A stretch of 64,000 nucleotides of DNA, taken from positions 1-64,000 of the IMG/VR virus record IMGVR_UViG_3300037010_003311; one strand, written 5' to 3'. Both the position numbers and the translations under genes were made by a program. Numbering within the stretch: the first letter of the stretch is position 1; each line of letters begins with the position of its first letter. This document shows, piece after piece, positions 14,912 through 62,629 of the stretch. The notes beneath the pieces were generated by a model. That model was not told the origin of the DNA, did no database searches, and saw nothing but the letters and a program-made list of their open reading frames with translations.

Positions 14912-15121
14912 ATGGGTAATAATATATATATCAAACATGGTTTCAAATCAAGAAACGATTATTTACTTGATTTGGCTGATAGCTATGGAGTAGAACCCGA
15001 AAAGGTTTTTCAATTGGCTAATATGCTTGGGGAAACCGAAGATTTTGATGGTTTAGTAACTGCTATTCAGGATATGGATTGGGATATGAAAGGTTACGAT
15101 GATAATTGGGATGACGAATGA
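14912..15121 (+). CDS. small acidic hypothetical protein
   Basis: RBS; overlaps topoisomerase start. Confidence 0.6.
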   Translation: MGNNIYIKHGFKSRNDYLLDLADSYGVEPEKVFQLANMLGETEDFDGLVTAIQDMDWDMKGYDDNWDDE

Positions 15122-17016: not shown

Positions 17017-17450
17017 TGAACAGATATGAAAAGCGGTTTTTACGAATTGATAGGGAAAAAGCCAGAAAAAATAAAATGGTGAAACCTAAACCAGTAATCA
17101 ATACTGAGCGAGTAAAGGCTATCTCATTAGCGATAGCTGAATACTTTAAAAATTCGGAAAAATATAAACAGGAACCAAAACCGCGACCAAAACAGTATTA
17201 TACTGTGCCCAGAATATTGAAACGATTTCAAAAAGAAGTATCCATAACATTAATAAACGAAATTAAAAACTTACCAAGAGATCGGATTAATATTAATTAT
17301 CTCAGTAAGAAATTTAACGTTAGTATCAAGACCATATATAGTTGGAAAAAATTTGGGTTTGATATTATTAACAGCGAAGTAGATAAAATACAATTTATTG
17401 AGGCTGTACAAAATAGCCCGAAAAAATTTATAATTCGGTGGGGTGAATAA
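17016..17450 (+). CDS. basic helix-turn-helix protein
   Basis: INYLSKKFNVSIKTIYSW HTH-like segment. Confidence 0.55.
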   Translation: MNRYEKRFLRIDREKARKNKMVKPKPVINTERVKAISLAIAEYFKNSEKYKQEPKPRPKQYYTVPRILKRFQKEVSITLINEIKNLPRDRININYLSKKFNVSIKTIYSWKKFGFDIINSEVDKIQFIEAVQNSPKKFIIRWGE

Positions 17451-17462
17451 TGAGGACTAACT

Positions 17463-31427: not shown

Positions 31428-32453
31428 ATGACAACAGTTAAAATTAAAAATAAAGATAAAACAGTTGGGCCAAAATATAAACTAGGTGAGCCAAAAGATT
31501 TTAACGGAAGAACTCTGTTTAGAGTTATAGCATTAAGAGCTTTTAGCAATGTAAATATTGGCGATATCGGTGGCTGGATTGAAACCGAAGATAACTTGTC
31601 CCATAGTGGTGACGCTTGGGTAGGCGATGAGGCAAGAGTCTATGACGAGGCAAGAGTATATGATAATGCTCATGTATTTAATAATGCCTGCGTGTATGGT
31701 AAGGCTCAAGTTAGGGGCGATGCCAGAATATATGACCAAGCTACTATATTTGGTAAAGCTAATGTATTTGGTAAAGCCCAAATATTTGAGGATGCAAATA
31801 TATACGATGAGGCTAAGGTTTATAATAATGCAAGAGTGCGTGGTAATACCAAAGTATATAATAATGCTAAAATACATGATCGAGCTAGAGTAAGTGATAA
31901 TGCTAGAGTAAGTGATAACGCAATAATAGATGGATCGGCTCAGGTATATGGTAATGTTAGGATATATGGGAATTCTAGAATTTTTGGTAATGCCAAAGTA
32001 TATGATGATGCCTGCGTGTATGGTAAGGCTCAAGTTAGAGGTGAGGCCAGAATATATGACGAAGCTACTATATTTGGTAAAGCTAAGGTATTTGGTAAAG
32101 CTCAAATATATGAGGAAGCAAATATATATGATGATGCTCAAGTGTACGGTAATACTAAAATATCTGGTTATGGTGAAGTATATGATAATGCTCAGGTATT
32201 TGGTAATGGATTGATTAAGGGTAATACCCAAGTATATGGTGACGCCATAGTTACCAAAGCCGTTAATACAATATCCACTTCTAGATATGATATTACGATT
32301 ACCGACAATTATCTAAAAATCGGGAGTGAAAATCACCCAATCGATGATTGGGAAGCTTTTACAGACGAGCAGATAGCTGACATGGATACCGGAGCACTAG
32401 AGTGGTGGAACATTTGGAAGCCAAGCATATTCAGCATGATAAAAAAGTATTAA
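31428..32453 (+). CDS. capped hexapeptide-repeat protein
   Basis: N-cap, long repeat tract with an internal block duplication, C-cap. Confidence 0.9.
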   Translation: MTTVKIKNKDKTVGPKYKLGEPKDFNGRTLFRVIALRAFSNVNIGDIGGWIETEDNLSHSGDAWVGDEARVYDEARVYDNAHVFNNACVYGKAQVRGDARIYDQATIFGKANVFGKAQIFEDANIYDEAKVYNNARVRGNTKVYNNAKIHDRARVSDNARVSDNAIIDGSAQVYGNVRIYGNSRIFGNAKVYDDACVYGKAQVRGEARIYDEATIFGKAKVFGKAQIYEEANIYDDAQVYGNTKISGYGEVYDNAQVFGNGLIKGNTQVYGDAIVTKAVNTISTSRYDITITDNYLKIGSENHPIDDWEAFTDEQIADMDTGALEWWNIWKPSIFSMIKKY

Positions 32454-35991: not shown

Positions 35992-37584
35992 ATGGTAGGA
36001 AAAAAATATAAACTTGGAGAATCAAAAAAGTCCCAAGGAAGAACTCTTTTTAGAGTTGTAGCGTTAAGAGATTTCGGTGACGTAAAAGCAGGTGATATCG
36101 GTGGTTGGATAGAAACTGAAACTAACTTATCTCATAGTGGTGATTCTTGGGTCTATGATGAGGCCAGAGTTAGTGGTGATACTTGGGTCTATGGTAATGC
36201 CAAAATATCCAATAATGCACAGATATTCGGTAATGCCTGCATATATGGTAATACCAAAGTAGGGGATGAAGCTCAGGTATTTGGTAATGCCATCGTATAT
36301 GGTAATGCTTTGATATATGGTTCTACTCAGGTATTTGGTAATGTTGAAATATATGAGAATGCCCAAGTATTTGGTATGGCTAAAGCATACGATAATGTTC
36401 GTATATTTGGTTATGCATGGATTACCGGTAATACTCAAGTATATGGTAACACCATAGTTACCAAAGCGGTTAATACAATATACACTGGTGAGTATGATAT
36501 TATCATTACTGACAACTATATAAAGATTTGGTGGGAAAATCACCCAATCGACGTTTGGGAAGCATTTACCGACGAGCAGATAGCTGACATGGATACCGGA
36601 GCGCTAGCGTGGTGGAAAGTTTGGAAGCCAATTATATTTGATATAATACAAAAAGGAAATAATATGACATCACAAAAAGAAATTAAAAACTTCTGGGAAA
36701 AGATGCTTAATTACCGTATAAATAAAAATAACTCCAAAAAAGAAGGAAATAATATGATGCAATCAAATGAAATTAAAAACGAGAATAAAGCAATTGTACC
36801 AAAATATAAACTTGGTGAAGCAAAAACCTTTAATGTAAGAACTCTTTTTAGAGTTGAAGCTCTGAGATCATTTGGCAATGTGTCTACCGGTGATATCGGT
36901 GGCTGGATTGAAAACGAAGATAATTTGTCTCATAGTGGAGATGCTTGGGTCTATGACGAAGCTATGGTATATGGTAATGCTCGAGTGAGTAATGACGCAA
37001 TAGTGAGGGATAATGCCTGCATATATGGTAATACCAAAGTAGGGGATGAAGCTCAGGTATTTGGTAATGCCATCGTATATGGTAATGCTTGTATAAGTGA
37101 TAATGCTCAGGTATATGGTAATGCTCGTATAAGTGATGACGCCCAAGTATACGATACAGCTCATGTATTCGATAACGCATATATAATCGATAATGCTTGG
37201 ATAGGTAATAATGCAAGAGTATGTGGCAATGCGCGTATAACTGATGATTCGCGAGTATACGATAACGCATTGATTAGTGGTCATTCCTTGATTTCTGATA
37301 GGGCTTTGATATATGGCAATGCCCAGGTATTTGATAATGGCTTGGTTAAGGGTAATACCCATGTATGGGGTAACGCCGAAGTTACCAAAGCAGTTATTAC
37401 GATACATACCGATGCTTACAATATTACCATTACTGATAATTATATAACTATTGGGTTCGAAAATCACCCAATCGCTGATTGGGAAACATTTACTGATGAT
37501 GAAATATCCAAAATGGATGCAGGAGCGTTAGATTGGTGGCGAGTCTGGAAGCCAATTATATTTGCTATAATAAATGCTTATTAA
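35992..37584 (+). CDS. in-frame fusion of two capped hexapeptide-repeat genes
   Basis: two complete N-cap/repeat/C-cap units; former intergenic DNA with its RBS is read through; internal start near 36754. Confidence 0.85.
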   Translation: MVGKKYKLGESKKSQGRTLFRVVALRDFGDVKAGDIGGWIETETNLSHSGDSWVYDEARVSGDTWVYGNAKISNNAQIFGNACIYGNTKVGDEAQVFGNAIVYGNALIYGSTQVFGNVEIYENAQVFGMAKAYDNVRIFGYAWITGNTQVYGNTIVTKAVNTIYTGEYDIIITDNYIKIWWENHPIDVWEAFTDEQIADMDTGALAWWKVWKPIIFDIIQKGNNMTSQKEIKNFWEKMLNYRINKNNSKKEGNNMMQSNEIKNENKAIVPKYKLGEAKTFNVRTLFRVEALRSFGNVSTGDIGGWIENEDNLSHSGDAWVYDEAMVYGNARVSNDAIVRDNACIYGNTKVGDEAQVFGNAIVYGNACISDNAQVYGNARISDDAQVYDTAHVFDNAYIIDNAWIGNNARVCGNARITDDSRVYDNALISGHSLISDRALIYGNAQVFDNGLVKGNTHVWGNAEVTKAVITIHTDAYNITITDNYITIGFENHPIADWETFTDDEISKMDAGALDWWRVWKPIIFAIINAY

Positions 37585-47610: not shown

Positions 47611-48378
47611 ATGTTAACCGAGCAAGATAAATTAAAAATCGTTTTAAAAAGTATGTCTAAAAAAAGATATAAAGCAGCGTTAAAAGAGCTTAACAATATT
47701 CCGTTATTTAAAGCTGATGGCAACTATCCGTTGTCGTTAGATGTTAGAGCTGTAATGGCGAATGAGGGTTCGATTGGTTTGGCTAAACTTTTAAGAGATA
47801 CGTTTAGATTTGATTTAACAGATCCAAACGTTAAAGATACCCCAAGTAGAGTAGCTAGTATGTGGGTAAATGAACTTATGGTTGGCAGATATACGGATAA
47901 ACCACGTCTGGAAGCATTTCCCGTCGAGGAAAAACATTTAAGTAAACATAGTATAGAAATGTTGCACGAAGATGCCTCTGTTTTAGAGTACGATGGGATA
48001 ATCATTAAAAAGATTGATGTTCGATCATTATGTTCGCATCATCTTATGCCTTTCTTTTCTGATGGTAAAAAGTCTTTTGCTTTAGTAGCTTATATACCAA
48101 CAACTAAGTTTTTAGGTATTAGTAAAATTCAACGTTTATCTAATTGGTATGGTGCAAGACCATCACTACAAGAGCAATTAACTTGGTCAATATATAAAGA
48201 GATGTGTGACACTCTTGGTACAGACGATGTATTTGTAATTATGAAAAACATTACACATACTTGCGAAACTCTACGTGGAGCTAAAACTGAAGATGGTAGT
48301 ACTACTACTATGTTCTATGGTGGAAAATTTAAAGATATCAAGAAACGTAATGAAGTAATCAATTTGGCAGCAGATTAA
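47611..48378 (+). CDS. folE: GTP cyclohydrolase I
   Basis: DTP.RVA, SLCSHHLMPF, GISKI.R, LQE, HTC..RG. Confidence 0.93.
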   Translation: MLTEQDKLKIVLKSMSKKRYKAALKELNNIPLFKADGNYPLSLDVRAVMANEGSIGLAKLLRDTFRFDLTDPNVKDTPSRVASMWVNELMVGRYTDKPRLEAFPVEEKHLSKHSIEMLHEDASVLEYDGIIIKKIDVRSLCSHHLMPFFSDGKKSFALVAYIPTTKFLGISKIQRLSNWYGARPSLQEQLTWSIYKEMCDTLGTDDVFVIMKNITHTCETLRGAKTEDGSTTTMFYGGKFKDIKKRNEVINLAAD

Positions 48379-48418: not shown

Positions 48419-48877
48419 ATGGAGAATAATGCAATTAATGATCTATGGTTTCTACCATTAGATTTCATTGAAAAGACCGAAAACGATAAGCGTTTAGTGT
48501 ATAGTGATACTGATTCTGTGGTGGGAAATTCAATTATTATAGTAAATGGTAAACCTATTAAAATTGAAGATTTTTATAATTCTTTACCTAATAACTATAT
48601 TGAAGAAAAAGATCATCACTTTGTAAAAAAAAGTGATGGTTTTGTAACGTTAACCGTTAATGATAATCATGAGCTCATAGATAAAGAAATTATTTATTGT
48701 ATGAAGCATTTAGTAAAAAAAAGATTTTTCCGAATTAAAACTGATACAAATGAAGTAATAATCACAGAGGATCATTCATTGATGGTTAAAAGAAATGGTT
48801 ATTTAATTGGTATAAAAGTTAAAGAACTGATGGAAGGTGATGAAATATATGAAATTTCAGAATCCCCCACTTTGTAG
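48419..48877 (+). CDS. family B DNA polymerase fragment (32-aa N-extein ending YSDTD) fused to split-intein N part
   Basis: YSDTD|SVVGNS block A, ITEDH block B; ORF ends after about 120 intein residues. Confidence 0.88.
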   Translation: MENNAINDLWFLPLDFIEKTENDKRLVYSDTDSVVGNSIIIVNGKPIKIEDFYNSLPNNYIEEKDHHFVKKSDGFVTLTVNDNHELIDKEIIYCMKHLVKKRFFRIKTDTNEVIITEDHSLMVKRNGYLIGIKVKELMEGDEIYEISESPTL

Positions 48878-49022
48878 AACGTGCTCTAATAAATTGATTG
48901 ATGATTCAATTTGGCAAAAATATATTAATGGTGAAACCGATCTAAAGGATAAAAAATTTTTCAATAATTTTTATTCTAAACTTAAAAAAAGGATATCAAA
49001 TGATATTAAAATTGAAAAATGA
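48849..49022 (+). CDS. small CxxC ORF between the split-intein halves (possible homing endonuclease remnant)
   Basis: MKFQNPPLCRTCSNKL; overlaps both flanking ORFs in a third frame. Confidence 0.45.
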   Translation: MKFQNPPLCRTCSNKLIDDSIWQKYINGETDLKDKKFFNNFYSKLKKRISNDIKIEK

Positions 49023-50004
49023 TTTTATAGTTGAAGATTTAGGTATTCGAGAAGAATGGGTTTATGATATAGAAGTTAAAGATAATCATAATTTCTTTGC
49101 AAATAATATCTTAGTACACAATTCCGCATATTTGCTATTCGATTTACCATTCAATAAATTTGATGATATCCGGCAACTGGTTGATTATATACAGCAGTTG
49201 TCGACTAAAATTGATACAGAATACAATAATGCTTTAAATTATTATGGTTCAATGTTTGCGGGGTTAAATCCTGAATTCAATATTATGAAATTTAAATCAG
49301 AAGTTGTAGCGTATCAAGGCTTCTTCAACACCAAAAAGTTTTATGCATTGAGTAAAGCTTGGGACGAAGGAGCTTTCTTTGATACGCCAGAAATTAAAAA
49401 GACCGGTGGCCAAATTAAGAAAGCAGACGTTACTAAGATATCGGAACAGCTTTTATCCTTAGTCTATAAAATACTTGTTTTACCATCAGAAACTAAAGAT
49501 CTTGAGTCATTATATAAAAAGATCTTTATTGAGACTAAAAACCGTATTAAAATGCAACTAAAGCATGATATAGATAATCTTGATTTTAAAAGTTTCGGTG
49601 TACCAAAAAAATGGAGTTTTAAAGCTACAAAAGATATGCAGTGGGTAACCGGTGCAAGATTGTATAATCAAATAGTGGAGGATCTTCACCGCCCTGGAGA
49701 TTCAATGTTAACTCTTCCAATTAAAGGGAATTTTAACATTCTTCAAAACTATGATGAACAATTATCTTTAAAAAATAAAGATTTAACTTATCTACTTAAA
49801 GCTGATGATTATAATGATATATCTACTTTAAGTATTCCACCGAATATGAATTCTGAACAAGTACAAAAACTATCAGCGGCATTTGAAAAATATTCAATTC
49901 GAGTAGATTTTGATCAGGTAATGTTATTTAATATAGATATGAAATTGGAAGTATTTGAAAAACTATTTCCCCCAGAAATTAAATTATTGGTAAAGGGAGA
50001 TTGA
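49000..50004 (+). CDS. split-intein C part (41 aa) fused to family B DNA polymerase C-terminal palm/thumb
   Basis: own AAAGGA RBS; VYDIEV..NHNFFANNILVHN|SAY; downstream FKSE and KKFY PolB-like motifs. Confidence 0.88.
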   Translation: MILKLKNDFIVEDLGIREEWVYDIEVKDNHNFFANNILVHNSAYLLFDLPFNKFDDIRQLVDYIQQLSTKIDTEYNNALNYYGSMFAGLNPEFNIMKFKSEVVAYQGFFNTKKFYALSKAWDEGAFFDTPEIKKTGGQIKKADVTKISEQLLSLVYKILVLPSETKDLESLYKKIFIETKNRIKMQLKHDIDNLDFKSFGVPKKWSFKATKDMQWVTGARLYNQIVEDLHRPGDSMLTLPIKGNFNILQNYDEQLSLKNKDLTYLLKADDYNDISTLSIPPNMNSEQVQKLSAAFEKYSIRVDFDQVMLFNIDMKLEVFEKLFPPEIKLLVKGD

Positions 50005-51089
50005 TGTTAATAGATCCTGCGAATACTCATATTTGTACCCCAGAACTTTATCAACAGTTAATGGATATGATTAAAAAACAACAAATTGCATTTCATCAAT
50101 TTTATAACGTTGAGATAGAAACTGATGAATTACCATTTCTAAATTTCATGCAAACCTATAAAGATAATCAAGCTACAAAGGTTTTAAATAAAACCTACTA
50201 CGATATCGAAACTTATGGTGTCAATGAAAATGGTGAAATAGTAGATGAATTCCCGGAAGTAGATAAAGCTGCGTTTCCAGTAAACGCTGTAGCCTTATAT
50301 AACAATATTACTAATGAAGCTACCATTATATCTTATGTAAATGATTGTAACATTACTGATCCAGTAGCTTTACAAGCTGGGGTTGAAGAATACTATGCTA
50401 AAACGGTCATAGAAAATCCAATCTATGAAATTCAAGATTTAAAAATCATAGTCGAAATAGTTGAAAATGAAAAACAACTTTTCCAATCATTTCATACCAA
50501 AATTCATTCGTTAGATACACTAATGTTGATTGGATTCAATAGTTCATTATTCGATGATGTATATATGATGAATAGAGGATCTAAGCTTTTTGGTGAGGAA
50601 GTATATCATAGTATGGTTTCAGAATTTCAAGTTACCAAATATAGTAGCCGGGTATTTGAGTGGCCAGATTATCTTTTGGTTGATCTATTAAAACTATACC
50701 AACCAGTTGATTCTGGTGGTATGGGCCTAGGCCAATCATTATCAAGTTATAAGCTAGATAATATTGCCGAAGTTGAATTAGGTATACAAAAATTAGATCT
50801 TGATGGGGGTTTCGTAAAAACCTATAGAACCAACATCGTTCAATATTTGACATACAACCTGATGGATACACTATTGACTTTTAAATTAGATCAAAAACTT
50901 CAATTTATTGAGCAAATTTATAGCTTATCGAAGTATAATAATTCGTCGATTGGTGCAACTATTAATGGTCGGTCAATCATGTATAAATATAGAAACGATC
51001 TTATTTATGCTAATCAAAAAAAATTGATCCGTGCTAAAAAATATTCTAGGGAAGTTTTTTATCAGATTGAAAAGGAGGTTAAAAAGTGA
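50004..51089 (+). CDS. family B DNA polymerase 3'-5' exonuclease domain as a separate gene
   Basis: ExoI YDIET, ExoII GFNS..FD..Y, YKLD.IA..ELG..K, ExoIII YN..D. Confidence 0.88.
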   Translation: MLIDPANTHICTPELYQQLMDMIKKQQIAFHQFYNVEIETDELPFLNFMQTYKDNQATKVLNKTYYDIETYGVNENGEIVDEFPEVDKAAFPVNAVALYNNITNEATIISYVNDCNITDPVALQAGVEEYYAKTVIENPIYEIQDLKIIVEIVENEKQLFQSFHTKIHSLDTLMLIGFNSSLFDDVYMMNRGSKLFGEEVYHSMVSEFQVTKYSSRVFEWPDYLLVDLLKLYQPVDSGGMGLGQSLSSYKLDNIAEVELGIQKLDLDGGFVKTYRTNIVQYLTYNLMDTLLTFKLDQKLQFIEQIYSLSKYNNSSIGATINGRSIMYKYRNDLIYANQKKLIRAKKYSREVFYQIEKEVKK

Positions 51090-51540: not shown

Positions 51541-52383
51541 ATGAAAGAAAACGAAAAAAATAGATTCGAGTTAAGTGAAAGGGATCCATATCTTTCACAA
51601 ACTTTTTATAGCTTAGAGGGTGAAGGAATGACTCTAGGGCGAACAGCTTTATTCTTAAGAATAAATGGTTGTAATGCTACTTGTACATTCTGTGACACAA
51701 GTTTTAGTATCAAGGGTGAAGAAAAATATAATCTTGTAAATATGGCAGAACCAGAATTTGTGGATTATCTTCGTAAAGAATACCAGCATCTTGATATTGA
51801 ACATGTGAATTCTATTACTATAACCGGTGGTGAACCACTTAAAAATATTAAACAGTTTAATAGAATGTTTAAAAATATTCTACATGTGTTTCCTAAAGTG
51901 GAGCATGTAATATTCGAAACTAATGGTACCTACCTAAGTTCGACTAGTAACTGTTTAAAGCTATTACGAGAAATTGGAGAATTTATTAATATAGATCAGA
52001 TTAACTTTACTTTAAGTATCAGTCCAAAACTATCCAGTAAAATGAGCTGGAGTAAAACAGATGATGCTGAAGTTTTATCTTGGTATAACGATATTCTTCA
52101 TAATTATAAATATTATCTAAATCGTTATTTAGATATACAAATGAAGTTTATTCAATTTCCAAATGATAGTGAATACTTTAATTTGAATCAAAATCTAATA
52201 AATTTATGTAAGGAATACAATATTCCAAACTATAAGATATTGATTATGCCTTTTACTCCACCAGATCCACTTGGTAAAGATAGTGCTATTTGGACAGAAT
52301 CTAAAGATACTGCGGCGAGATATGCGTTAAAGCATAATTTTAGATACAGTCCTCGTATCCATATTGATCGCAAATTGGATTAA
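51541..52383 (+). CDS. queE: 7-carboxy-7-deazaguanine synthase (radical SAM)
   Basis: FYSLEGEG, FLR..GCNxxCxFCDT, TGGEP, ETNG, ISPK, SPRIH. Confidence 0.92.
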   Translation: MKENEKNRFELSERDPYLSQTFYSLEGEGMTLGRTALFLRINGCNATCTFCDTSFSIKGEEKYNLVNMAEPEFVDYLRKEYQHLDIEHVNSITITGGEPLKNIKQFNRMFKNILHVFPKVEHVIFETNGTYLSSTSNCLKLLREIGEFINIDQINFTLSISPKLSSKMSWSKTDDAEVLSWYNDILHNYKYYLNRYLDIQMKFIQFPNDSEYFNLNQNLINLCKEYNIPNYKILIMPFTPPDPLGKDSAIWTESKDTAARYALKHNFRYSPRIHIDRKLD

Positions 52384-52385
52384 TT

Positions 52386-53666
52386 ATGGGAAATGTTAGT
52401 ATCCGGGATATTACTGCTTATGTTTGGAATACATCTCTTAATAACTACAGTCCGGTAGCTACATCTGATTTCGAAGTACATAAAGATCCGATCAGGACCC
52501 AACACAGTGATGGTAACCAGTATCGATTAAAGATTAATGCTATCTCAAGTACTATAGATGAGGTTAATCCAGTTTTTAATATGTTTGGTATTATTAATAC
52601 AACTGATACAAATAATGAGCATTTCTGGCTTAAAAAATGTTTTAAAGTTGAGGTTAACATATCATCTCAAATTAAAGTAATTTATCTGTTACCAATGTCC
52701 TATAATGTTAACTTGGAGAAATCAGTAACTTATATCTGTATGGAAATGAGCGAACGATTATTAGAGCTTGGAAATTTTAAATACTTTACGGAATTAGGAT
52801 TATCCGATTTTACAACATTTTTCAAAAATCGGATAACTGAAGCAAATAACTATTTAAATGAATTGGCCAAGTTAGCTTGCAAGCTTGATAAGTCTTTTGA
52901 AGGATTTAAGATTATTCCGAGAGCACCAGTTAGTACTATGGATCGGGCTTCTAATCAGATAAATAATAATAACATTATGCAGCTAGCCGATCAGTTATTC
53001 GAACTCGGCTGGTTTAAATGTCCAGCATATGCGAGTTATGATTCCTTTGATTTACAAGCTATGTCAGCTAACCCAAAAGATAAGTGTATTATAACGTATA
53101 AGATACTTGATCTAGGGGATATTCGAAAAATAACTAACGCAGTAAATGTTACTACTATGGCTCTATATTCTGGGTTACAAGATCAAACAGTGAAGCCATT
53201 TTTTGATACCGCATTTTTTGATAATTTTATCAATAAGAAAGCTACATTTGAATTTTCAAAATATGGTTCTTGGGTAAACTGTCTTATGGATGGTGGGCTT
53301 GAACAGGGTGATAGTACTAATCGTATTGAATTGGAAGCATTATTTGGTTCCAAAGAAAATATGGAAGCTAAACTCTGTTGTTTAAAACAACTCGTAGCTA
53401 TTAATCCACAAGTCTATTCATATGTATTACCAAATATGTTGTTAGGCGCAGATTTTGGGGTTTATAATCTTGGCTCGGGTGGTATTACTGCCTATGATTT
53501 TATAGTAGCTATAAACTATTCGGCCACCAATTTAGATGGCCGAACGGATGGTAGCAATTTAACGTTTACTACTAAATTAAAAACGCTAAAATTTAATTAT
53601 CCGATAATACAAACGGATTTTTATAATAACTTAAATATTAATGGGACACCATGTTTAAATGGATGA
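52386..53666 (+). CDS. hypothetical protein
   Basis: 426-aa ORF, no motif recognised. Confidence 0.75.
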   Translation: MGNVSIRDITAYVWNTSLNNYSPVATSDFEVHKDPIRTQHSDGNQYRLKINAISSTIDEVNPVFNMFGIINTTDTNNEHFWLKKCFKVEVNISSQIKVIYLLPMSYNVNLEKSVTYICMEMSERLLELGNFKYFTELGLSDFTTFFKNRITEANNYLNELAKLACKLDKSFEGFKIIPRAPVSTMDRASNQINNNNIMQLADQLFELGWFKCPAYASYDSFDLQAMSANPKDKCIITYKILDLGDIRKITNAVNVTTMALYSGLQDQTVKPFFDTAFFDNFINKKATFEFSKYGSWVNCLMDGGLEQGDSTNRIELEALFGSKENMEAKLCCLKQLVAINPQVYSYVLPNMLLGADFGVYNLGSGGITAYDFIVAINYSATNLDGRTDGSNLTFTTKLKTLKFNYPIIQTDFYNNLNINGTPCLNG

Positions 53667-53697
53667 CATTAATAACAATAACCATTAAAGGGAAATC

Positions 53698-54168
53698 ATG
53701 GGAACGCACAAACGAAAGTCGAAGCGAGTAGAACTCCTTGAATTATCAAGGCAGCAGGAATTAAGAAGTGTATTAACTCCAGAAGAATACGATTATAAAT
53801 TTAAGTCGTTTCTGACAGAGTTTAATATTGATCCGGCTTATATGAATTTTTATAAATTTTTACAAGATCCGGAATTCGAATTACCTCTTCAGGGGCTTTT
53901 AAGTCTTATACGTGGCGCTGGTTTTGATCTTCAGTTAACACTAGTGAATAAAAATTTTAAATACGATGATGCAAAAGAGTGGGACCAATTCCTAACTCAT
54001 TTAAAAAATGTAGTATTTAAATACCATGTACCTAAAAAGATTATTGACCCAACAGATGGAAAACCTCTCAAAAAGAGAGTTAGTTCGAAAACAATAATGA
54101 CTTCTATGAACGAGGTTGATACAATATCTACTTCAGAATTACAAAATCTTATGGATGAGGTTTGGTAA
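53698..54168 (+). CDS. hypothetical protein
   Basis: ORF with RBS. Confidence 0.65.
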   Translation: MGTHKRKSKRVELLELSRQQELRSVLTPEEYDYKFKSFLTEFNIDPAYMNFYKFLQDPEFELPLQGLLSLIRGAGFDLQLTLVNKNFKYDDAKEWDQFLTHLKNVVFKYHVPKKIIDPTDGKPLKKRVSSKTIMTSMNEVDTISTSELQNLMDEVW

Positions 54169-54189
54169 TTTAATATATAAAGAGGTTTT

Positions 54190-54942
54190 ATGACAGGATT
54201 ACCAGGGGCGGGAATACCAGGACAAGGTGTACCACAATATCAACAACAGGTACCATCATCATATCAACAAGTTGGTGTACCACAAGCTACGGTGCCAATG
54301 CAACAAGCTACGGTGCCAATGCAACCAATGCAACAAGCTACGGTGCCAATGCAACCAATGCAACAAGCTACGGTGCCAAGCAACGGATTACCAGGACCGA
54401 CGAATACTAGTACCTACCGAAATTTAATTACTGTAGGAACTATTACCCATACTGGTAACCAACTATTTGAAATTAATGGTAGAATTGATATTACCGATAA
54501 ATTCCCAGATGAATTTGCGTTTGTTTGGATTGCACCATCAGTTATTAATAATACTAAACAATCAAATAGAAGTTATGTATTGACTGATAAAATTAATATG
54601 AAATTCAGTTCAGAAGAGTTGCATGGATTAGCAGAAGCTTTAACAGAAGCTGGTATGTGGGGACGTTGTTCTTTTATTAAATTTAGTGATCCAAAAAAAT
54701 CGGGGTCGAACAATAACACTACCTCAAATGATTCAAAAAAGTTTACTGTTACTGCAAGCGTAGAAGGTGATAAAGTTAAAGTATTTATGAACATCATACA
54801 GGGTTCTAAAAAAATAGCTATGCCATTAGAAAAGTATACCGCATTAGGTTTAGCTCATCAAATACATGATTTAGCTACGGAAATTAATAGAATGAAATTT
54901 GAGCTAGATAGAGAAAGAGCAAAAAATTTTATTAAACAATAG
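54190..54942 (+). CDS. candidate Whirly-like ssDNA-binding protein with Gln/Pro-rich N-terminus
   Basis: IAP..RSY...K..MKFS..E, F.DP.K, KKFTV, IAMPL in the same order as plant Whirly motifs. Confidence 0.55.
   Translation: MTGLPGAGIPGQGVPQYQQQVPSSYQQVGVPQATVPMQQATVPMQPMQQATVPMQPMQQATVPSNGLPGPTNTSTYRNLITVGTITHTGNQLFEINGRIDITDKFPDEFAFVWIAPSVINNTKQSNRSYVLTDKINMKFSSEELHGLAEALTEAGMWGRCSFIKFSDPKKSGSNNNTTSNDSKKFTVTASVEGDKVKVFMNIIQGSKKIAMPLEKYTALGLAHQIHDLATEINRMKFELDRERAKNFIKQ
54283..54379 (+). repeat. in-frame 21/30-bp tandem repeat (QQATVPM(QPM))
   Basis: CAAGCTACGGTGCCAA four times. Confidence 0.9.
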
Positions 54943-54953
54943 GATTAGACAAT

Positions 54954-55406
54954 TTGAAACTTGATTCTAATATTTCGAATCAGACTTATACTGATTATCT
55001 ATTATCAAAATCAAATCGGTCTTTACGAGATACCGGGATACCCGGTATTCATATTCATTATTCCAGGAATAGGAGCGAAGTTTTTTTCCGGCCAACCCTA
55101 AAGATAAATAAAAAAGATATAATGAAACATCGTAATTTTGATTTAAACTATTTTGGGCTTTGGATAGCAATCCGATATTACAATAAAATAGTTTTAGATT
55201 TTGCAACAGATGAAAAAAATAAGGATACTCGGTTAAATATAAATACAGTTTTCGATTTTATGTTATTCAATAACGTAAAACTTGATCAACAAGTATACGA
55301 AGCTATTGCAAATAGAGATGAAAAATCTTTACAATTGCTTTATGAAATTACTTTCAATCAAAAACCATTTGATTTCGAAAGTATTATTAACGATATACAA
55401 ACGTGA
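54954..55406 (+). CDS. hypothetical protein
   Basis: TTG after AGGA. Confidence 0.55.
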   Translation: MKLDSNISNQTYTDYLLSKSNRSLRDTGIPGIHIHYSRNRSEVFFRPTLKINKKDIMKHRNFDLNYFGLWIAIRYYNKIVLDFATDEKNKDTRLNINTVFDFMLFNNVKLDQQVYEAIANRDEKSLQLLYEITFNQKPFDFESIINDIQT

Positions 55407-55433
55407 AAAATATAAAGGTTAAAAGGATTAATT

Positions 55434-55865
55434 TTGATAGATTTAAAAATGAGTGAAACAGAAGTATCTCCACCAGCAATTGCGGAAGTAAATGCCTCTA
55501 CCGATTTAGATACTGGTGGGAAATATACAAAGATTATAAATCTTACGAATCATAAACTAACGGAAATTCTTAGTGGGATCCAAATTGATTTCTCTGAGAG
55601 TGGCGTAGCTAGAGTTGATTGTAGAGATGAAATCATTTATCGTGATCCATCTGGTTATACAATTTCTCGTACAAAATATGTACATATTGTTGGCATCGAT
55701 TTGGATAATATTAATCCAAATCATTTATACATAGTTTCAGCTGTGGTATTGAATGCCATTCGTGAACGTGGATTACAATTTGATAATATTGTGGCACCAG
55801 CTAAAATCATTAGGGATAGTGATAACAACGTTATTGCGGCTAGGGGGTTCCGAGTAAATGGTTAA
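55434..55865 (+). CDS. phage hypothetical protein
   Basis: NLT.H, SGVARV, YIVS, RD..N.I...GF motifs. Confidence 0.65.
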   Translation: MIDLKMSETEVSPPAIAEVNASTDLDTGGKYTKIINLTNHKLTEILSGIQIDFSESGVARVDCRDEIIYRDPSGYTISRTKYVHIVGIDLDNINPNHLYIVSAVVLNAIRERGLQFDNIVAPAKIIRDSDNNVIAARGFRVNG

Positions 55866-57418
55866 TGGAAAAGTTAAAATTAGAAATTGAGCAAAAATTA
55901 TTCAATTCCAGGAACCGAATCGATTATGTATATTTGAAAAAATATCCAGAAATCTTAAATCGGGCCCAAGAGCATATGACTGGATTTGATGATAAGATTA
56001 CTTCATCTCAATTAGTTTTATTTTTTTACGAAGGTATATTGTCACCACCTAAGTGTCAGAACGCACATTGTGAAAAATATGTTAAGTGGTGGTCGAATAA
56101 AAAATGCTTTTCCAAATATTGTTGCATAAAATGTAGTAATTCTGATCCAGAAAAAGATCAAACAACTATTAAAAATAATATGGAAAAATATGGTGTACCA
56201 AGAGCATCTATGACCACTGAATCTAAACAGAAACTTTTAAATACTAATTTGTGCCGGTATGGTGTAAGTAGTACCGCTCAATTAAAAGAAGTAAAAGATA
56301 AAGCTAAACAAACCTGTTTAAAAAAGTATAATTATATATCAAGTTCTATATCCGATATAAAAAATCTGGAAGAATATTCTAATCGGGATTTTATAATTGA
56401 AAATTTTATAAACGATAATATTTTTGATTTATATGGATTTCGAAATTATTTTAATTGTGGTCAAGTTGCTGCTCATAATACTTTAAACCGCTTAAATATT
56501 GATTATAATAAGTACGCGGCAAGAAATACTTTTATAGAGCGGATCGTTGAAGATTTTTTAAAAGAAAATAATATAACTTTTATCAAAAATGATAGAATGG
56601 TTCTTAATGGTAAAGAACTTGATTTCTATTTACCAGAGCATAAGCTTGGAGTAGAATTAAATGGTTTATATTGGCATAGTTATAATACAAAAACAAAAAT
56701 TTTAAAATCAAAAAAAGATATTAAAAATTTTCACCGTATTAAAACCGATAGATGTGAAGAACAGAATATACAACTTTTTCATATATTCGAAAATGAAATT
56801 CTTTATAAGTTTGAGATATGGAAATCAGTATTAGAAAACACTCTTGGTAGAAGCATACAACTAGAAGCCGAGGATCATACTATTAAGCCGGTACCCAAAT
56901 ATGATATAAAACCATTTCTAGAAGCTAATCACTTACAAGGTTACTGCTCAAGTTCAATTGCTTATGGTCTGTATTATAATAACAATAATACTGGAATACC
57001 AGAGCTAATAAGCATTATGACTTTTACTAAAGGTAGTGGAAGTGCTGATTGGGAGCTAATGCGATTTTGTAATAAACTTGGTTATAATGTTTATGGTGCA
57101 GCAAGCAGATTGCTTAAAGCATTTCGGGTTGGGTACAAAGGAAATATTAAAACCTGTGTAAATAGGCGCTGGTCGAATGGTAACTTATACCGACAACTTG
57201 GTTTCCAAGAAATTGGTATAAGTGAACCGAATAAATTCATTATTAATTTTAATAAGATTAATAATTTATATAGTAGACTAGCTTTTCAAAAATACAAATT
57301 GCCAAAAAATTCAAATTTCGATAATACTTTATCAGCTGATGAAAATATCATAAATAATGGTTATGGAATCATTTGGGATTCTGGTCAAATAAATTTTATC
57401 TTAAAAGGAGATATATGA
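55865..57418 (+). CDS. Hef-like free-standing homing endonuclease with C-terminal GNAT-like region
   Basis: N-terminal Cys cluster, KYG repeats, ELDFY..GVELNGLYWHS nuclease motif, NHLQG..ELMRF..GAASRL..LGF..WDSG. Confidence 0.75.
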   Translation: MEKLKLEIEQKLFNSRNRIDYVYLKKYPEILNRAQEHMTGFDDKITSSQLVLFFYEGILSPPKCQNAHCEKYVKWWSNKKCFSKYCCIKCSNSDPEKDQTTIKNNMEKYGVPRASMTTESKQKLLNTNLCRYGVSSTAQLKEVKDKAKQTCLKKYNYISSSISDIKNLEEYSNRDFIIENFINDNIFDLYGFRNYFNCGQVAAHNTLNRLNIDYNKYAARNTFIERIVEDFLKENNITFIKNDRMVLNGKELDFYLPEHKLGVELNGLYWHSYNTKTKILKSKKDIKNFHRIKTDRCEEQNIQLFHIFENEILYKFEIWKSVLENTLGRSIQLEAEDHTIKPVPKYDIKPFLEANHLQGYCSSSIAYGLYYNNNNTGIPELISIMTFTKGSGSADWELMRFCNKLGYNVYGAASRLLKAFRVGYKGNIKTCVNRRWSNGNLYRQLGFQEIGISEPNKFIINFNKINNLYSRLAFQKYKLPKNSNFDNTLSADENIINNGYGIIWDSGQINFILKGDI

Positions 57419-58926: not shown

Positions 58927-59387
58927 GTGGTACAAACCACTCGGATACTATCTTAAAGACGATTGTCTTAATAAGTTGCGTCTCCAAGAAAAAGGCTGGT
59001 AAGCAACCAGCATGTAACTTATATGGTGGCCCATTGTTTTCAAGCAGTTGGGAATACGCCAAAAATCTTAAACCAGACTTCATTCATATTATGAGTGCAA
59101 AATATGGGTTAATTGATTATAAAGAGGTTATTGAACCATATGATGTTACATTAAATGATATGGATAAAGAAACAATACAAGTATGGTCAGATAAAGTATT
59201 CGAAGATTTAAAATCTAAATACGATATCGAAAAAACCAAGTTTATTATTCTTGCGGGTAAAAACTATTATTCTGGATTTATCGATAAATTACCACATATT
59301 GAATTACCACTTGGTAGTCTCCCTATTGGTAAAAGAGTACAATATCTTCAAAATCTGAATAAAAAATATAATCAAGGATTGTTATGA
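58923..59387 (+). CDS. DUF6884/YaaA-like protein
   Basis: LISC..KK, A..LY.G..F, SAKYGLI, I.PYD, AG..Y, IGKR. Confidence 0.75.
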   Translation: MSGTNHSDTILKTIVLISCVSKKKAGKQPACNLYGGPLFSSSWEYAKNLKPDFIHIMSAKYGLIDYKEVIEPYDVTLNDMDKETIQVWSDKVFEDLKSKYDIEKTKFIILAGKNYYSGFIDKLPHIELPLGSLPIGKRVQYLQNLNKKYNQGLL

Positions 59388-60118
59388 AGTATAAGGAAGA
59401 TTCCAGGGATAATCAAACGTTATTTCTATGGTTAGATCTTGAGACTACTGGTCTTAATAGTAAGACTTGTGGTATTATTGAAGCAGCTGGATGCTTTGAA
59501 TTAAATGGAGAAGTGTTAAAAGAATTTGAACTTTTAATTAACCCGTTTACATATCCAAATCAAATTGAAGTACAAGAAAAGGCTCTAGCTGTAAACAATC
59601 GAACTATTCCAGAAATACAAACATTCCTGGATCAGAAACAATGTCTAGACTGGTTAAATAGTTGGATCGAATACTACATAACACAATATGGTTGTAATAG
59701 GCCATATATAGTTGGGTATAATGTTGGATTCGATGTAGATTTCGTTAAAGAGTGGTACGCGGCTAATAACGTGAAGTATTCATTGTATTTTCAATATAAA
59801 TTTATTGATGTGATGCAACATGTTATGATGTTAAGCTATCTTGGAGTACTTGATCCTTATAATAACACCCTAAAAGAGATGTGTTTAAAGTTTGGGATTA
59901 ATATTGATAATGCTCATACGGCAATTGCTGATATCCGAGCAACAAGAGAATTAAGTCAAAAGTTAGTACAAACTCATAAATATATACAGTGGTTAAAACC
60001 AACACCTATAGAGGAGGGAAGCACAGACATAGATAGTATTGTAGCAAACTGGGGTTCAAAAAGAGTTACTGAAAAATTAGGTTTAGTACAACATGATGTT
60101 ACTAAAGATTATAATTAG
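59384..60118 (+). CDS. DnaQ-like DEDDh 3'-5' exonuclease
   Basis: DLETTG, GYNV.FD, AH.A.AD. Confidence 0.88.
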   Translation: MKYKEDSRDNQTLFLWLDLETTGLNSKTCGIIEAAGCFELNGEVLKEFELLINPFTYPNQIEVQEKALAVNNRTIPEIQTFLDQKQCLDWLNSWIEYYITQYGCNRPYIVGYNVGFDVDFVKEWYAANNVKYSLYFQYKFIDVMQHVMMLSYLGVLDPYNNTLKEMCLKFGINIDNAHTAIADIRATRELSQKLVQTHKYIQWLKPTPIEEGSTDIDSIVANWGSKRVTEKLGLVQHDVTKDYN

Positions 60119-60160: not shown

Positions 60161-61615
60161 ATGACATATGATATTTCCAACTCAAGCATTCTTCTAATGG
60201 AGAATAACAAGAAAAAGTTTATAAATCTGGACGCGACATTTAAACCATTCGAACCAGAATTATTAAAAATGATCCTTATTGATCAAAAATCTTTTACAGA
60301 AATTTGTAATTTTGTAGATTCAAAAATTAATGCGTTAGTTAAGGCGGTTGAATCAACAACTACCCCGACCGAATTAAAAATGGTCAAGATAGATGACTTC
60401 TTGGATGATACACCTCTTACTGGAGAAGAGGCAAAAATAATTAACTCTGATAAATTAGAAGAGTTAATTGAATTTAGTTCTGGGCAATTAACTATAAAAG
60501 ATAATACTTTATATTGGAGAGGGGAACCTATCTATAATAAAAAGATGATTGAATTCATTAGTCATTATCAATCAAATATGGTAAATATTGAATTCGTTGA
60601 ACGTTTTTTAGATAAAGTCTATCAGAATCCAGATGTAAACGTTCGTAACGATATTTTCGATTTCATTGTTAATAGATGTGGTATCTTAAGCGATGGGGAT
60701 TTCTTAGCCTATAAAAGAGTTCGTGATTCATATATGGATATTCATTCTAATTCTATGGATAACAGTATTGGAAAAATAGTTTTTATGGACCGTATAAAAT
60801 GTGATCCAAACTCTAATCGCACCTGTTCTAGAGGGCTTCATGTTTGTACGAAGGGTTATTTATCTTCGTTTTCTGGAGATAGAATAGTACTTTGTAAAGT
60901 TAATCCAAAAGATGTTGTAGCTATACCAGTTGATTATAGTGCTATGAAAATGCGTACATGCTACTATAAAGTAGTAGGTGAAGTTAAAAGTAATAGTGAG
61001 TTTTCTGATATCTTAGCAAATCTATATGATGATCCAACCAGTGGTGATAAATTATTTATGGAAGTAGCGGAAATCAATGACAATATTGAAGTTGGTATTC
61101 AAGTAAACACAACTACCGTAGAAACTGATTCTCGAGTTCCAGTTACTCCGGCTGGTAAAGTTATAGATATAGAAGTAACAACTCCGGAAGAAACATTATT
61201 GTTAATTTTCGGTAATGATTCTAAAGTACTAAGTTCCTTAAATGTTGCTAAGAAAGCTTATGCTGAACATAAGGATTTAGATTTATATAATACTGATCTT
61301 ATTAATAGGGCTACAAAAATTAGACCTAAAAATACTAAACTATTATATGCTATTGATGTTTGGTCTACTAGAACTACTAAAGCCAAACAACTTGATGAAG
61401 TGTTAAAAAACAATGCTTCGGTTACTGATGATGCTAAAACAATTAAAGAAGTAATTGAACTCTTTAGTACGGACACTAAGGTAGCAAAAGCATTAGAAAA
61501 AATAGTGGAACCTGAAGAGAATAAAAATTTATTCGAAACTATAGTTGATCGGATTAAACAACTGCGTCCAACTAGTGCTAAACTAGTTAAGTTTCTAGAT
61601 AATTTAAAAAAATAA
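60161..61615 (+). CDS. rIIB: RIIB-like protein with C-terminal extension
   Basis: DG.FLAYK.V, D.HS, CSRGLH, KVNP.DVV.IP.DY...KMR.C.Y. Confidence 0.88.
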   Translation: MTYDISNSSILLMENNKKKFINLDATFKPFEPELLKMILIDQKSFTEICNFVDSKINALVKAVESTTTPTELKMVKIDDFLDDTPLTGEEAKIINSDKLEELIEFSSGQLTIKDNTLYWRGEPIYNKKMIEFISHYQSNMVNIEFVERFLDKVYQNPDVNVRNDIFDFIVNRCGILSDGDFLAYKRVRDSYMDIHSNSMDNSIGKIVFMDRIKCDPNSNRTCSRGLHVCTKGYLSSFSGDRIVLCKVNPKDVVAIPVDYSAMKMRTCYYKVVGEVKSNSEFSDILANLYDDPTSGDKLFMEVAEINDNIEVGIQVNTTTVETDSRVPVTPAGKVIDIEVTTPEETLLLIFGNDSKVLSSLNVAKKAYAEHKDLDLYNTDLINRATKIRPKNTKLLYAIDVWSTRTTKAKQLDEVLKNNASVTDDAKTIKEVIELFSTDTKVAKALEKIVEPEENKNLFETIVDRIKQLRPTSAKLVKFLDNLKK

Positions 61616-61699: not shown

Positions 61700-62629
61700 A
61701 TGGTAGAAAAAAAATATAAACTTGGTGAGTCAAAAGGGTTCCAAGGAAGAACTCTTTTTAGAGTTGTAGCAATAGTTGGATTCGCTGATGTAAACATTGG
61801 TGAAATCGGTGGTTGGGTAGAGAAAGAAAATAACCTAGCTCACGATGGTGATGCCTGGATCTATGGTGACGCTATGGTATATGGGGATGCTCGAGTTAGT
61901 GGTGATGCTATAGTATATGGTGATGCCCGAGTTAGTGGTGAGGCCCGAGTATATGGTAAGGCTCACGTTAGTGGTGAGGCTCGCGTTAGTGGTGAGGCTC
62001 ACGTTAGGGATAATGCTGAAGTATATGGTAATGCTCAAGTATACGGTTATGCTATGGTATATGGTAATGCTGAAGCATATCGTTTTGCCAAAGTATATGA
62101 TTATACCGAAGTGTATGATAATGCAGAAGTATATGGTAATGCTGAAGTATATTGTGATGCTCGAGTTAGTGGTAATGCTAAGGTGCATGGTAATGCGATG
62201 GTATATGGTAATACTCGAGTTAGTGGTAATGTTATGATACATGGTAATGCGATGGTATATGGTAATTCTGAGGTATATGATAGAGCTCAAGTATATGGGG
62301 AGGCCCAAGTGTATGATAATGCCAAAGTGTATGGTGATACTTATATATATGATAAAGCCATTATATACGATGATGCTGAAGTGTATGATAATGCTAAAGT
62401 ATATGATAATGCCCAAGTGTATGGTTTTGCTGAAGTATATGATAATGCTAAAGTATATGATAGGGCTCAGGTATCTGGTATTGCTGAAGTATATGGTAGG
62501 GCTCAGGTATCTGGTATTGCTGAAGTATATGATAGGGCTCAGGTATATGGTATGGCTCAGGTATATGGTTGGGCCAAAGTATATAACGATACTCATGTAT
62601 CTGGTTATGATGAAGTCTATAGTGTATGA
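61700..62629 (+). CDS. hexapeptide-repeat protein, second cluster, no C-cap
   Basis: N-cap plus repeats ending NDTHVSGYDEVYSV. Confidence 0.9.
   Translation: MVEKKYKLGESKGFQGRTLFRVVAIVGFADVNIGEIGGWVEKENNLAHDGDAWIYGDAMVYGDARVSGDAIVYGDARVSGEARVYGKAHVSGEARVSGEAHVRDNAEVYGNAQVYGYAMVYGNAEAYRFAKVYDYTEVYDNAEVYGNAEVYCDARVSGNAKVHGNAMVYGNTRVSGNVMIHGNAMVYGNSEVYDRAQVYGEAQVYDNAKVYGDTYIYDKAIIYDDAEVYDNAKVYDNAQVYGFAEVYDNAKVYDRAQVSGIAEVYGRAQVSGIAEVYDRAQVYGMAQVYGWAKVYNDTHVSGYDEVYSV

What the first reader, a model, noticed from the sequence alone, without database searches (positions are those of the whole stretch)
54190..54942. Candidate phage Whirly-fold ssDNA-binding protein
Seen: FVWIAP..RSY...KINMKFSSEELHGL..CSFIKFSDPKKSGS..KKFTV..VFMNI..KIAMPL. 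From memory this follows the order of plant Whirly motifs (LQFAP..RQYDW..KQ.FSLS..E.G..C.FFHDP.KG.S..K.LKV..FFNL..IYIP). It has a Gln/Pro low-complexity N-terminus. Whirly proteins are best known from plant organelles, so a phage homolog beside replication genes could be a non-OB-fold SSB and bear on the family's origin. The alignment is by eye only.
Basis: inference. Interest (0 to 1): 0.7.

Follow-up and report, generated by a model that had tools for sequence, protein, structure and literature searches.

The report
Whirly-fold nucleic-acid binder in jumbo phage
This jumbo-phage gene encodes a protein confidently predicted to have the same four-bladed "Whirly" fold as the plant organelle single-stranded-DNA binders, plus a floppy Gln/Pro-rich tail; it probably coats single-stranded DNA during phage replication, but similar phage proteins are already known.

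Summary

The family is small and unnamed. In several phage lineages it sits among split PolB, exonuclease, ligase and Rad50-like genes. The 227-kb phage record shows no OB-SSB, gp32, gp2.5-like or PC4 match. It has PhiKZ-type RNA polymerase pieces but no chimallin or ChmC.

Most likely it is a tetrameric single-stranded nucleic-acid binder serving as the phage's replication/recombination SSB. An RNA-binding, ChmC-like role is the main rival. DNA versus RNA binding is untested.

Novelty is moderate. ChmC (a Whirly-fold jumbo-phage protein) is published, and PF08536-bearing phage clusters already exist in databases.

The parts
54180..54185 (+). Shine-Dalgarno-like AAGAGG, 4 nt upstream of the ATG
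   Evidence: Read directly from the sequence.
54190..54942 (+). CDS, 250 aa: N-terminal disordered tail plus Whirly-fold core; single copy in the phage record
   Evidence: ORF list. Family of 26 clusters at 50% identity. The A3 profile finds only this one place in the 226,657-bp record.
54190..54414 (+). aa 1-75: Q/P/M/G-rich low-complexity, predicted disordered (prion-like) tail with no acidic tip
   Evidence: pLDDT below 50 over aa 1-74. Composition Q21 P17 T10 G10 V10 M8. Length and sequence are hypervariable among relatives, and the wastewater relative's contigs do not lay on 54240-54431.
54295..54384 (+). 30-bp tandem repeat x3 (98% matches) encoding PMQQATVPMQ units inside the tail
   Evidence: Tandem Repeats Finder, score 173. 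Logan contigs of three independent runs end inside it.
54424..54660 (+). Whirly repeat 1: four beta-strands (aa 79-88, 91-100, 107-116, 135-139) plus helix 1 (aa 141-157); contains invariant K138 (MKFS)
   Evidence: AF2 models. Invariant columns. Helix 1 lies in the predicted tetramer interface.
54670..54936 (+). Whirly repeat 2: four beta-strands (aa 161-165, 183-192, 195-204, 207-214) plus long helix 2 (aa 215-249); contains the KFSDPKK motif (D167 nearly invariant) and invariant K183
   Evidence: AF2 models. Alignments. Helix 2 (core 140-169) forms most of the predicted tetramer contacts.
54697..54720 (+). aa 170-177: disordered Ser/Asn/Thr-rich loop between strands 5 and 6
   Evidence: pLDDT below 50 at core residues 95-102. 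Variable length in the alignment.

Best explanation
The gene encodes a homotetrameric Whirly-fold (type I PC4-like, beta4-alpha x2) protein that binds single-stranded nucleic acid, with a fast-evolving Q/P/M-rich disordered N-terminal tail. Its most likely role is as the non-OB-fold ssDNA-binding protein of this jumbo phage's replication and recombination machinery. By analogy with StWhy2, ssDNA would wrap around the edges of the beta-sheet blades of the tetramer without sequence specificity, protecting and organising ssDNA at forks and breaks. The disordered tail would give cooperativity or condensate formation, or recruit partners, as the Gly/Gln/Pro-rich linker does in bacterial SSB and the N/G-rich tail does in ChmC. 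Supported by prediction: the fold, its closest structural relatives and the tetramer. Shown directly: the genomic context and the lack of any match to the four other SSB families searched. Inferred only: nucleic-acid binding, the preference for DNA over RNA, and the role of the tail.
Against: No binding assay exists, and fold does not fix the substrate. MRP1/2 and ChmC have the same fold and bind RNA, and ChmC comes from jumbo phages with the same kind of RNA polymerase (PMC11077065). This phage encodes PhiKZ-type msRNAP pieces, and one relative sits next to a KH-domain gene and an RNAP piece. The record is only about 81% complete, and HMM searches cannot exclude a divergent OB-fold SSB. T4-like phages that do have gp32 also carry Whirly-like-fold proteins (BFVD hits), so the fold does not imply 'the' replicative SSB. 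The tail lacks the acidic tip that canonical SSBs use to recruit partners. The query itself misses the Pfam Whirly model, and profile searches against PDB sequences found nothing. The two conserved upstream genes remain unidentified.
Confidence: 0.5

Rival explanations
1. It is a ChmC-like RNA-binding protein: a Whirly-fold tetramer with a disordered tail that binds phage mRNAs, possibly forming condensates, and supports transcription or translation coupling in an msRNAP jumbo phage rather than DNA replication.
For: ChmC is a Whirly-fold homotetramer with a low-complexity disordered tail. It binds ssRNA (58 nM) better than ssDNA (184 nM), forms condensates and is essential in jumbo phages (PMC11077065). 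This phage has PhiKZ-like split RNAP beta/beta' genes. The jumbo-phage family members carry prion-like Q/N/P/M/G tails while the bacterial or mobile-element members do not. P0033 neighbours a KH-domain gene and an RNAP piece. Pseudomonas phage EL proteins appear among the BFVD fold matches.
Against: There is no sequence relation to ChmC: hhalign probability is 0.3% against PhiKZ gp67, and phrog_3284 finds nothing in the genome. No chimallin shell protein was found by tblastn or phrog_4795, so the nuclear-export rationale is missing. ChmC is beta3-alpha x2, whereas this protein is beta4-alpha x2 and scores higher against the plant ssDNA-binding Whirly proteins than against the RNA-binding MRP1/2. 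Gene neighbourhoods are dominated by DNA-metabolism genes.
Confidence: 0.25
2. It is a DNA-architectural or regulatory protein: a nucleoid-associated or transcription-factor-like Whirly protein that compacts or marks phage or host DNA, perhaps in connection with 7-deazaguanine-modified DNA or topoisomerases, rather than a replisome SSB.
For: Plant Whirly proteins were first described as transcription regulators and nucleoid compaction factors (PMC7209962; PMC11077065 discussion). The tail-less relatives sit near gyrB/gyrA. The phage module pairs the gene with FolE/QueE deazaguanine genes.
Against: No helix-turn-helix or other dsDNA-reading element is present. The fold's best-characterised activity is single-strand binding. 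Linkage with QueE/FolE may simply reflect conserved synteny within one phage clade.
Confidence: 0.15
3. It does not bind nucleic acid: the Whirly-like fold serves as a protein scaffold or inhibitor, as in SsgA/SsgB cell-division proteins or CdiI immunity proteins.
Confidence: 0.05

Closest known systems
Plant organellar Whirly proteins (WHY1/WHY2/WHY3, PBF-2 p24; Pfam PF08536; PDB 4koo, 4kop, 4koq, 1l3a, 3n1h)
   Different: The query scores below the PF08536 threshold. A literal KGKAAL motif is absent. The N-terminus is a Q/P/M-rich low-complexity tail rather than a targeting peptide. The gene is encoded by a jumbo phage. ssDNA binding is untested.
ChmC (PhiKZ gp67, PhiPA3 gp61, Goslar gp176; phrog_3284), Enustun et al. 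2024, PMC11077065
   Same: Both are jumbo-phage proteins with a Whirly-type fold, a homotetramer (predicted here) and a low-complexity disordered tail, encoded by phages with a multisubunit RNAP.
   Different: No sequence similarity is detectable. ChmC has beta3-alpha repeats and a C-terminal N/G-rich tail. ChmC belongs to chimallin-encoding nucleus-forming phages, and no chimallin was found here. ChmC prefers RNA.
Auto-annotated phage Whirly proteins (ESM Atlas viral cluster with PF08536 in 50% of members; UniProt A0A6J5NR37 'Whirly transcription factor [uncultured Caudovirales phage]')
   Same: They are phage-encoded with the same fold (Atlas TM 0.68/0.74, rmsd 2.8 A over 145 residues; BFVD TM 0.54/0.65).
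   Different: They are shorter (about 140-160 aa), have no long low-complexity tail and pass the Pfam model. None has been studied experimentally, as far as the searched literature shows.
Bacteriophage T5 PC4-like protein and bacterial YdbC/SP_0782 (type II PC4-like ssDNA binders)
   Same: They belong to the same PC4-like superfold and include a phage-encoded ssDNA binder implicated in recombination-dependent replication (PMC7549692).
   Different: They are single beta4-alpha units that dimerise (type II). Here the two units are tandem in one chain (type I) and a tetramer is predicted. PF02229 gives no match in the genome.
Bacterial OB-fold SSB with its Gly/Gln/Pro-rich disordered linker
   Same: Both are proposed to coat ssDNA as a homotetramer, and both have a Q/P/G-rich disordered segment (the SSB linker composition is from my own knowledge).
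   Different: The fold is unrelated (not OB). The tail is N-terminal here and lacks the acidic tip. PF00436 gives no match.

Membership tests
Whirly (Pfam PF08536; plant WHY/PBF-2) | Tandem beta4-alpha x2 fold (type I PC4-like) with Whirly proteins as the nearest structures | tested here: met
Whirly (Pfam PF08536; plant WHY/PBF-2) | Homotetramer ('whirligig') assembled through the helices | tested here: met
   In silico only. The four-copy prediction scores ipSAE 0.93 against 0.00 for the best control, partner pLDDT 86, 95-100% contact agreement between runs; interface on helix 1 and helix 2. That mark was reached by 20 of 30 proteins solved as pairs and 1 of 23 solved as single chains, in a calibration with two copies. 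Needs SEC-MALS.
Whirly (Pfam PF08536; plant WHY/PBF-2) | Scores above the PF08536 gathering threshold (23 bits) | tested here: not met
   The query has no hit at E<=1. The best relative, P0011, scores 20.3 bits (E 5.3e-4). Nine of 30 members hit below threshold, colinearly. This supports remote homology, not formal membership.
Whirly (Pfam PF08536; plant WHY/PBF-2) | KGKAAL motif / conserved lysine in strand 1 needed for higher-order assembly (Cappadocia 2012, cited in PMC7549692; motif recalled from memory) | tested here: inconclusive
   Strand 1 reads THTGNQLFEI, so the literal motif is absent. No residue-level structural alignment was available to check for an equivalent lysine.
Whirly (Pfam PF08536; plant WHY/PBF-2) | Sequence-nonspecific ssDNA binding on the blade edges | not testable with these tools
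   Requires gel shift, fluorescence polarisation or a co-structure.
ChmC (phrog_3284) | Sequence membership in the ChmC family | tested here: not met
   hhalign of A2 against PhiKZ gp67 gives probability 0.3%. phrog_3284 has no match in the genome.
ChmC (phrog_3284) | Encoded by a chimallin (ChmA) nucleus-forming phage | tested here: not met
   No hit with PhiKZ gp54 by tblastn or with phrog_4795. Caveats: the record is about 81% complete, and the phrog_4795 search had no positive control.
ChmC (phrog_3284) | Whirly-type tetramer plus low-complexity disordered tail | tested here: met
   The tail is N-terminal here, and N- and/or C-terminal in relatives.
PC4 / T5 PC4-like (PF02229) | Single beta4-alpha unit that dimerises; PF02229 match | tested here: not met
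   The protein is a tandem two-unit chain. PF02229 has no match in the genome.
PUR-alpha (PF04845) | PUR repeats; PF04845 match | tested here: not met
OB-fold SSB / T4 gp32 / T7 gp2.5-like | OB fold; PF00436, PF08804 or PF10991 match | tested here: not met
   The fold is not OB. None of these families matches anywhere in the genome record.

The most novel reading that the evidence does not exclude
A whole clade of msRNAP-encoding, chimallin-less jumbo phages runs its replisome without any OB-fold SSB, using this tailed Whirly tetramer as the sole replicative and recombination SSB. In addition, this phage lineage shares direct ancestry with the 'plant-specific' organellar Whirly proteins, making Whirly another phage-derived organelle replication factor alongside Twinkle and the phage-type RNA polymerase.
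Probability: 0.12. Interest if true: 0.8.

Novelty: new member of a known kind. Interest (0 to 1): 0.5.

Why it matters
Plant literature up to 2025-2026 still calls Whirly proteins plant-specific (PMC12230644; bioRxiv 10.64898/2026.10.24.761589). The only characterised phage Whirly-fold protein, ChmC, is an RNA binder tied to the phage nucleus. This gene defines a small, unnamed family (26 clusters among 1.84 billion representatives) that is structurally nearer to the plant ssDNA-binding Whirly proteins than ChmC's published comparisons suggest. It sits in the DNA-replication module of jumbo phages in which four common SSB families gave no match. If it is shown to bind ssDNA, it would give these phages a non-OB replicative SSB. 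It would also provide a tractable prokaryotic-virus model for Whirly biochemistry and for SSB-type condensates driven by prion-like tails, and supply sequences for testing where the plant family came from. If it instead binds RNA, it would extend ChmC-like biology beyond nucleus-forming phages.

Tried and rejected
- Single-sequence Pfam and PHROGs scans of the query found nothing useful.
- Profile searches (A1, A2, A3) and phmmer of P0011 and P0016 against PDB sequences gave no Whirly hit.
- PF08536 searched against the phage record found no match.
- tblastn against INPHARED phages found none.
- IMG/VR pattern scans failed: A2 was too diverse, and A1 gave 43 pattern matches but no relative.
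- The profile search of the 5.8-billion-protein database with A3, and the search with P0011, found no bridging proteins that carry PF08536.
- hhalign against PhiKZ ChmC showed no relation, so ChmC orthology was rejected.
- The chimallivirus identity of the phage was rejected.
- ESM Atlas look-ups of the two conserved upstream genes (426 aa and 156 aa) gave only low-confidence leads (pTM 0.38 and 0.22).
- An Rfam scan of the roughly 600-bp insertion in the PolB piece found no intron family.
- No true RNA run holds the locus. The one run labelled RNA is probably DNA and holds a roughly 90%-identical relative, so expression could not be assessed.
- I could not obtain plant Whirly sequences through the tools, so no hhalign against a Whirly alignment, residue-level check of DNA-contact residues, or phylogeny was done.

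Full report
**Observation**

All quoted motifs occur in the stated order. Residues 1-75 are Q/P/M/G-rich and contain a 30-bp tandem repeat in three copies at 98% identity, 54295-54384, encoding PMQQATVPMQ units.

**Family**

A word-indexed search of 5.8 billion proteins found nine unnamed relatives. An exhaustive HMMER pass over 1.84 billion cluster representatives found only 26 clusters at E<=1e-3. A core of about 170 residues is conserved, with K138 and K183 invariant and L92, P116, Y129 and D167 nearly so across 30 sequences.

The flanking tails vary greatly in length, sequence and position. The jumbo-phage members carry Q/P/M/N/G/Y-rich tails at the N- and/or C-terminus. Members from bacterial-looking or mobile-element contexts (P0029, P0030, P0032, P0034) have none. 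No tail ends in an acidic tip.

Laying contigs from independent metagenomes on the locus gave two results. Assemblies break inside the tandem repeat. A roughly 90%-identical wastewater relative matches the flanks and the core but not 54240-54431. The core is therefore constrained, and the tail evolves fast.

**Fold**

With only the ten close relatives as alignment, AlphaFold2 already gave beta4-alpha-beta4-alpha for residues 79-249 and disorder for residues 1-74. With the 30-sequence core alignment (A3), the model reached pLDDT 90.5 and pTM 0.84.

Structural comparisons:
- **Foldseek against the PDB:** the first 16 hits are all plant Whirly proteins (4koo WHY1, 1l3a PBF-2, 3n1h/3r9y/3r9z StWhy2, 4koq WHY3, 4kop WHY2; E 1.6e-6 to 1.6e-4, TM 0.55-0.64). 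PUR-alpha, SsgA/B and MRP1/2 follow.
- **Swiss-Prot AFDB:** WHY1, WHY3 and WHY2 rank first.

**Sequence-level link to Whirly**

The query does not hit PF08536, and profiles of the family find no PDB sequence. When each of the 30 members was scanned on its own, nine hit PF08536 at E<=1, and no other family matched more than two members.

The itemised hits are:

| Member | E-value | Bits |
|---|---|---|
| P0011 | 5.3e-4 | 20.3 (cutoff 23) |
| P0016 | 7.6e-3 | 16.5 |
| P0021 | 0.012 | 15.9 |
| P0019 | 0.03 | 14.6 |
| P0033 | 0.092 | 13.0 |

All of them cover HMM positions about 33-127 and the same part of the core, strand 3 to strand 8.

Language-model neighbours include 15 of 100 clusters with PF08536. 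I read this as remote homology to the Whirly family that falls short of formal Pfam membership.

**Quaternary structure**

Four copies of the core were predicted to assemble. The score was ipSAE 0.93 in each of three runs, against 0.00 for the best of three controls. Partner pLDDT was 86, and contact agreement between runs was 95-100%. That mark was reached by 20 of 30 proteins solved as pairs of one chain and by 1 of 23 solved as single chains. The calibration used two copies rather than four, and my own alignment was used, so these counts hold only roughly.

The interface is made by helix 1 (core 66-78), helix 2 (core 140-169) and strand 1. This is the kind of helix-centred tetramer described for PBF-2, WHY2 and MRP1/2 (PMC7549692). 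It is a prediction, and it may partly reflect the model's memory of solved Whirly tetramers.

**Genome and context**

The window is the first 64 kb of a 226,657-bp IMG/VR virus record. The record is about 81% complete with 31.9% GC, and it occurs in microbial-mat, sediment and vent metagenomes.

Genes around the Whirly-fold gene:

| Coordinates | Gene |
|---|---|
| 12098-13633 | ATP-dependent ligase |
| 15118-18938 | T4-type topoisomerase II subunits |
| 47611-48378 | GTP cyclohydrolase I |
| 49000-51089 | two PolB pieces |
| 51541-52383 | QueE |
| 52386-54168 | two unknown genes |
| 54190-54942 | the Whirly-fold gene |
| 55865-57418 | homing endonuclease |
| 59384-60118 | DnaQ-like exonuclease |
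| 60161-61615 | rIIB |

Further along the genome lie rIIA, a RecJ-like exonuclease, PhiKZ-type RNAP beta/beta' pieces and another PolB piece.

The gene order from FolE through PolB and QueE to the two unknowns and the Whirly gene is kept in relatives down to about 30% identity (L002, L003, L006 and the P0020 contig).

Other lineages show different neighbours:
- P0019 follows a Rad50-like AAA_23 ATPase.
- P0033 lies between a 5'-3' exonuclease/NAD-ligase and a KH protein, an RNAP piece and a helicase.
- P0017 lies among ThyX, PolB and Pnkp/RNA-ligase genes.
- P0030 and P0056 lie near gyrB/gyrA.
- P0034 (Malaciobacter mytili, WP_114843277.1) lies near a UvrD helicase and a DNA methyltransferase.

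The record has no match to PF00436, PF08804, PF10991, PF02229 or RecA. It has only one copy of this family.

**Known precedent**

Enustun et al. 2024 (PMC11077065) described ChmC of chimalliviruses. It is a Whirly-type (beta3-alpha x2) homotetramer with a disordered N/G-rich tail. It binds ssRNA (58 nM) better than ssDNA (184 nM), forms condensates and is needed for mRNA handling around the phage nucleus.

The present family is not ChmC by sequence. The phage shows no chimallin, although the phrog_4795 search had no positive control and the record is incomplete.

The fold is widespread in phages (BFVD hits). The ESM Atlas holds a viral cluster in which half the members carry PF08536 (TM 0.68/0.74 to this model), and an unannotated viral cluster at TM 0.82 by the query and 0.61 by the match. 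So a phage Whirly protein is not unprecedented. I found no paper describing a phage Whirly-family SSB. Recent plant papers still call Whirly proteins plant-specific.

**Mechanism**

The best-supported reading is a tetrameric Whirly-fold binder of single-stranded nucleic acid. I put the probability of the fold plus the tetramer at about 0.85-0.9.

That it acts on ssDNA as the phage's replication and recombination SSB is an inference. It rests on three things: the DNA-metabolism neighbourhoods in several lineages, the closer structural match to the ssDNA-binding plant proteins than to MRP1/2, and the lack of any match to the four other SSB families searched. I put this at about 0.5.

The main rival is a ChmC-like RNA-binding role (about 0.25), given the msRNAP and the prion-like tail. 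An architectural or regulatory DNA-binding role (about 0.15) and a function that does not involve nucleic acid (about 0.05) are less likely. The tail plausibly provides multivalency or condensation, or recruits partners. This is by analogy only.

**Verdict**

The protein is a new, divergent member of a known kind, the Whirly/PC4-like binders of single-stranded nucleic acid, which already have phage representatives. Interest is moderate. The origin-of-Whirly idea remains untested.

Noticed in passing
window 48434-49986 (ORFs 48419-48877 and 49000-50004): Compared with relative L002, the first PolB piece is interrupted. L002 aa 5-33 align to 48434-48520 and aa 31-317 align to 49120-49986, so about 600 bp is inserted in the window's copy. 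No Rfam intron family matches it.
   Followed up: partly
window 49000-51089 and 59384-60118; genome 88924-90168 (L009:4924-6165): The family-B DNA polymerase is encoded in at least three separate, non-colinear genes. They match phrog_262 positions 581-793, 102-350 and 382-550. There is also a separate DnaQ/RNase_T-like exonuclease, and homing endonucleases lie nearby.
   Followed up: partly
window 55865-57418: A 517-aa homing endonuclease (phrog_3339, E 6e-95) sits where relatives L002 and L003 carry a 238-252-aa gene with Pfam Tad6 (PF25188). That gene has no counterpart in the window.
   Followed up: partly
window 47611-48378 and 51541-52383: GTP cyclohydrolase I and a QueE-like radical-SAM enzyme are interleaved with the polymerase genes. 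Relatives add QueC and PTPS/QueD. This suggests that the DNA of this phage clade carries 7-deazaguanine modifications.
   Followed up: no
window 31428-32453, 35992-37584, 61700-62629: There are three paralogues of a repeat-containing family of unknown function (phrog_5070 / phrog_7964, E down to 1e-130), each with several matched stretches.
   Followed up: no
genome 77460-80740 (L008:13460-16737): PhiKZ-type split multisubunit RNA polymerase beta/beta' genes are present, yet no chimallin (phrog_4795) or ChmC (phrog_3284) was found. This may be an msRNAP jumbo phage outside the nucleus-forming Chimalliviridae.
   Followed up: partly
L004:8001-8579 and L018:8001-8609: Tail-less family members (P0030, P0056) lie on 127-198-kb contigs in a conserved block with an HDOD-domain gene, type II secretion/pilus genes and gyrB/gyrA. 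This looks bacterial or megaplasmid-like rather than phage-like.
   Followed up: no
window 55029-55049: A perfect 9-bp-stem palindrome (GATACCGGGATACCCGGTATT) lies inside the downstream ORF 54954-55406. It was flagged as terminator-like but lacks a clean T-run.
   Followed up: no
window 52386-53666 and 53698-54168: Two genes conserved immediately upstream of the Whirly gene in all close relatives have no family match. The Atlas structure neighbours of the 426-aa protein are tail or baseplate-like (gpD/XkdQ/YqbQ), but its model is poor (pTM 0.38).
   Followed up: partly
window 53600-55500 (runs X1-X7): The locus is held near-identically by microbial-mat and sediment metagenomes and partly by hydrothermal-vent runs. 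A relative at about 90% identity occurs in wastewater. Together with 31.9% GC and a homologue in Malaciobacter mytili, this hints at a Campylobacterota host.
   Followed up: no
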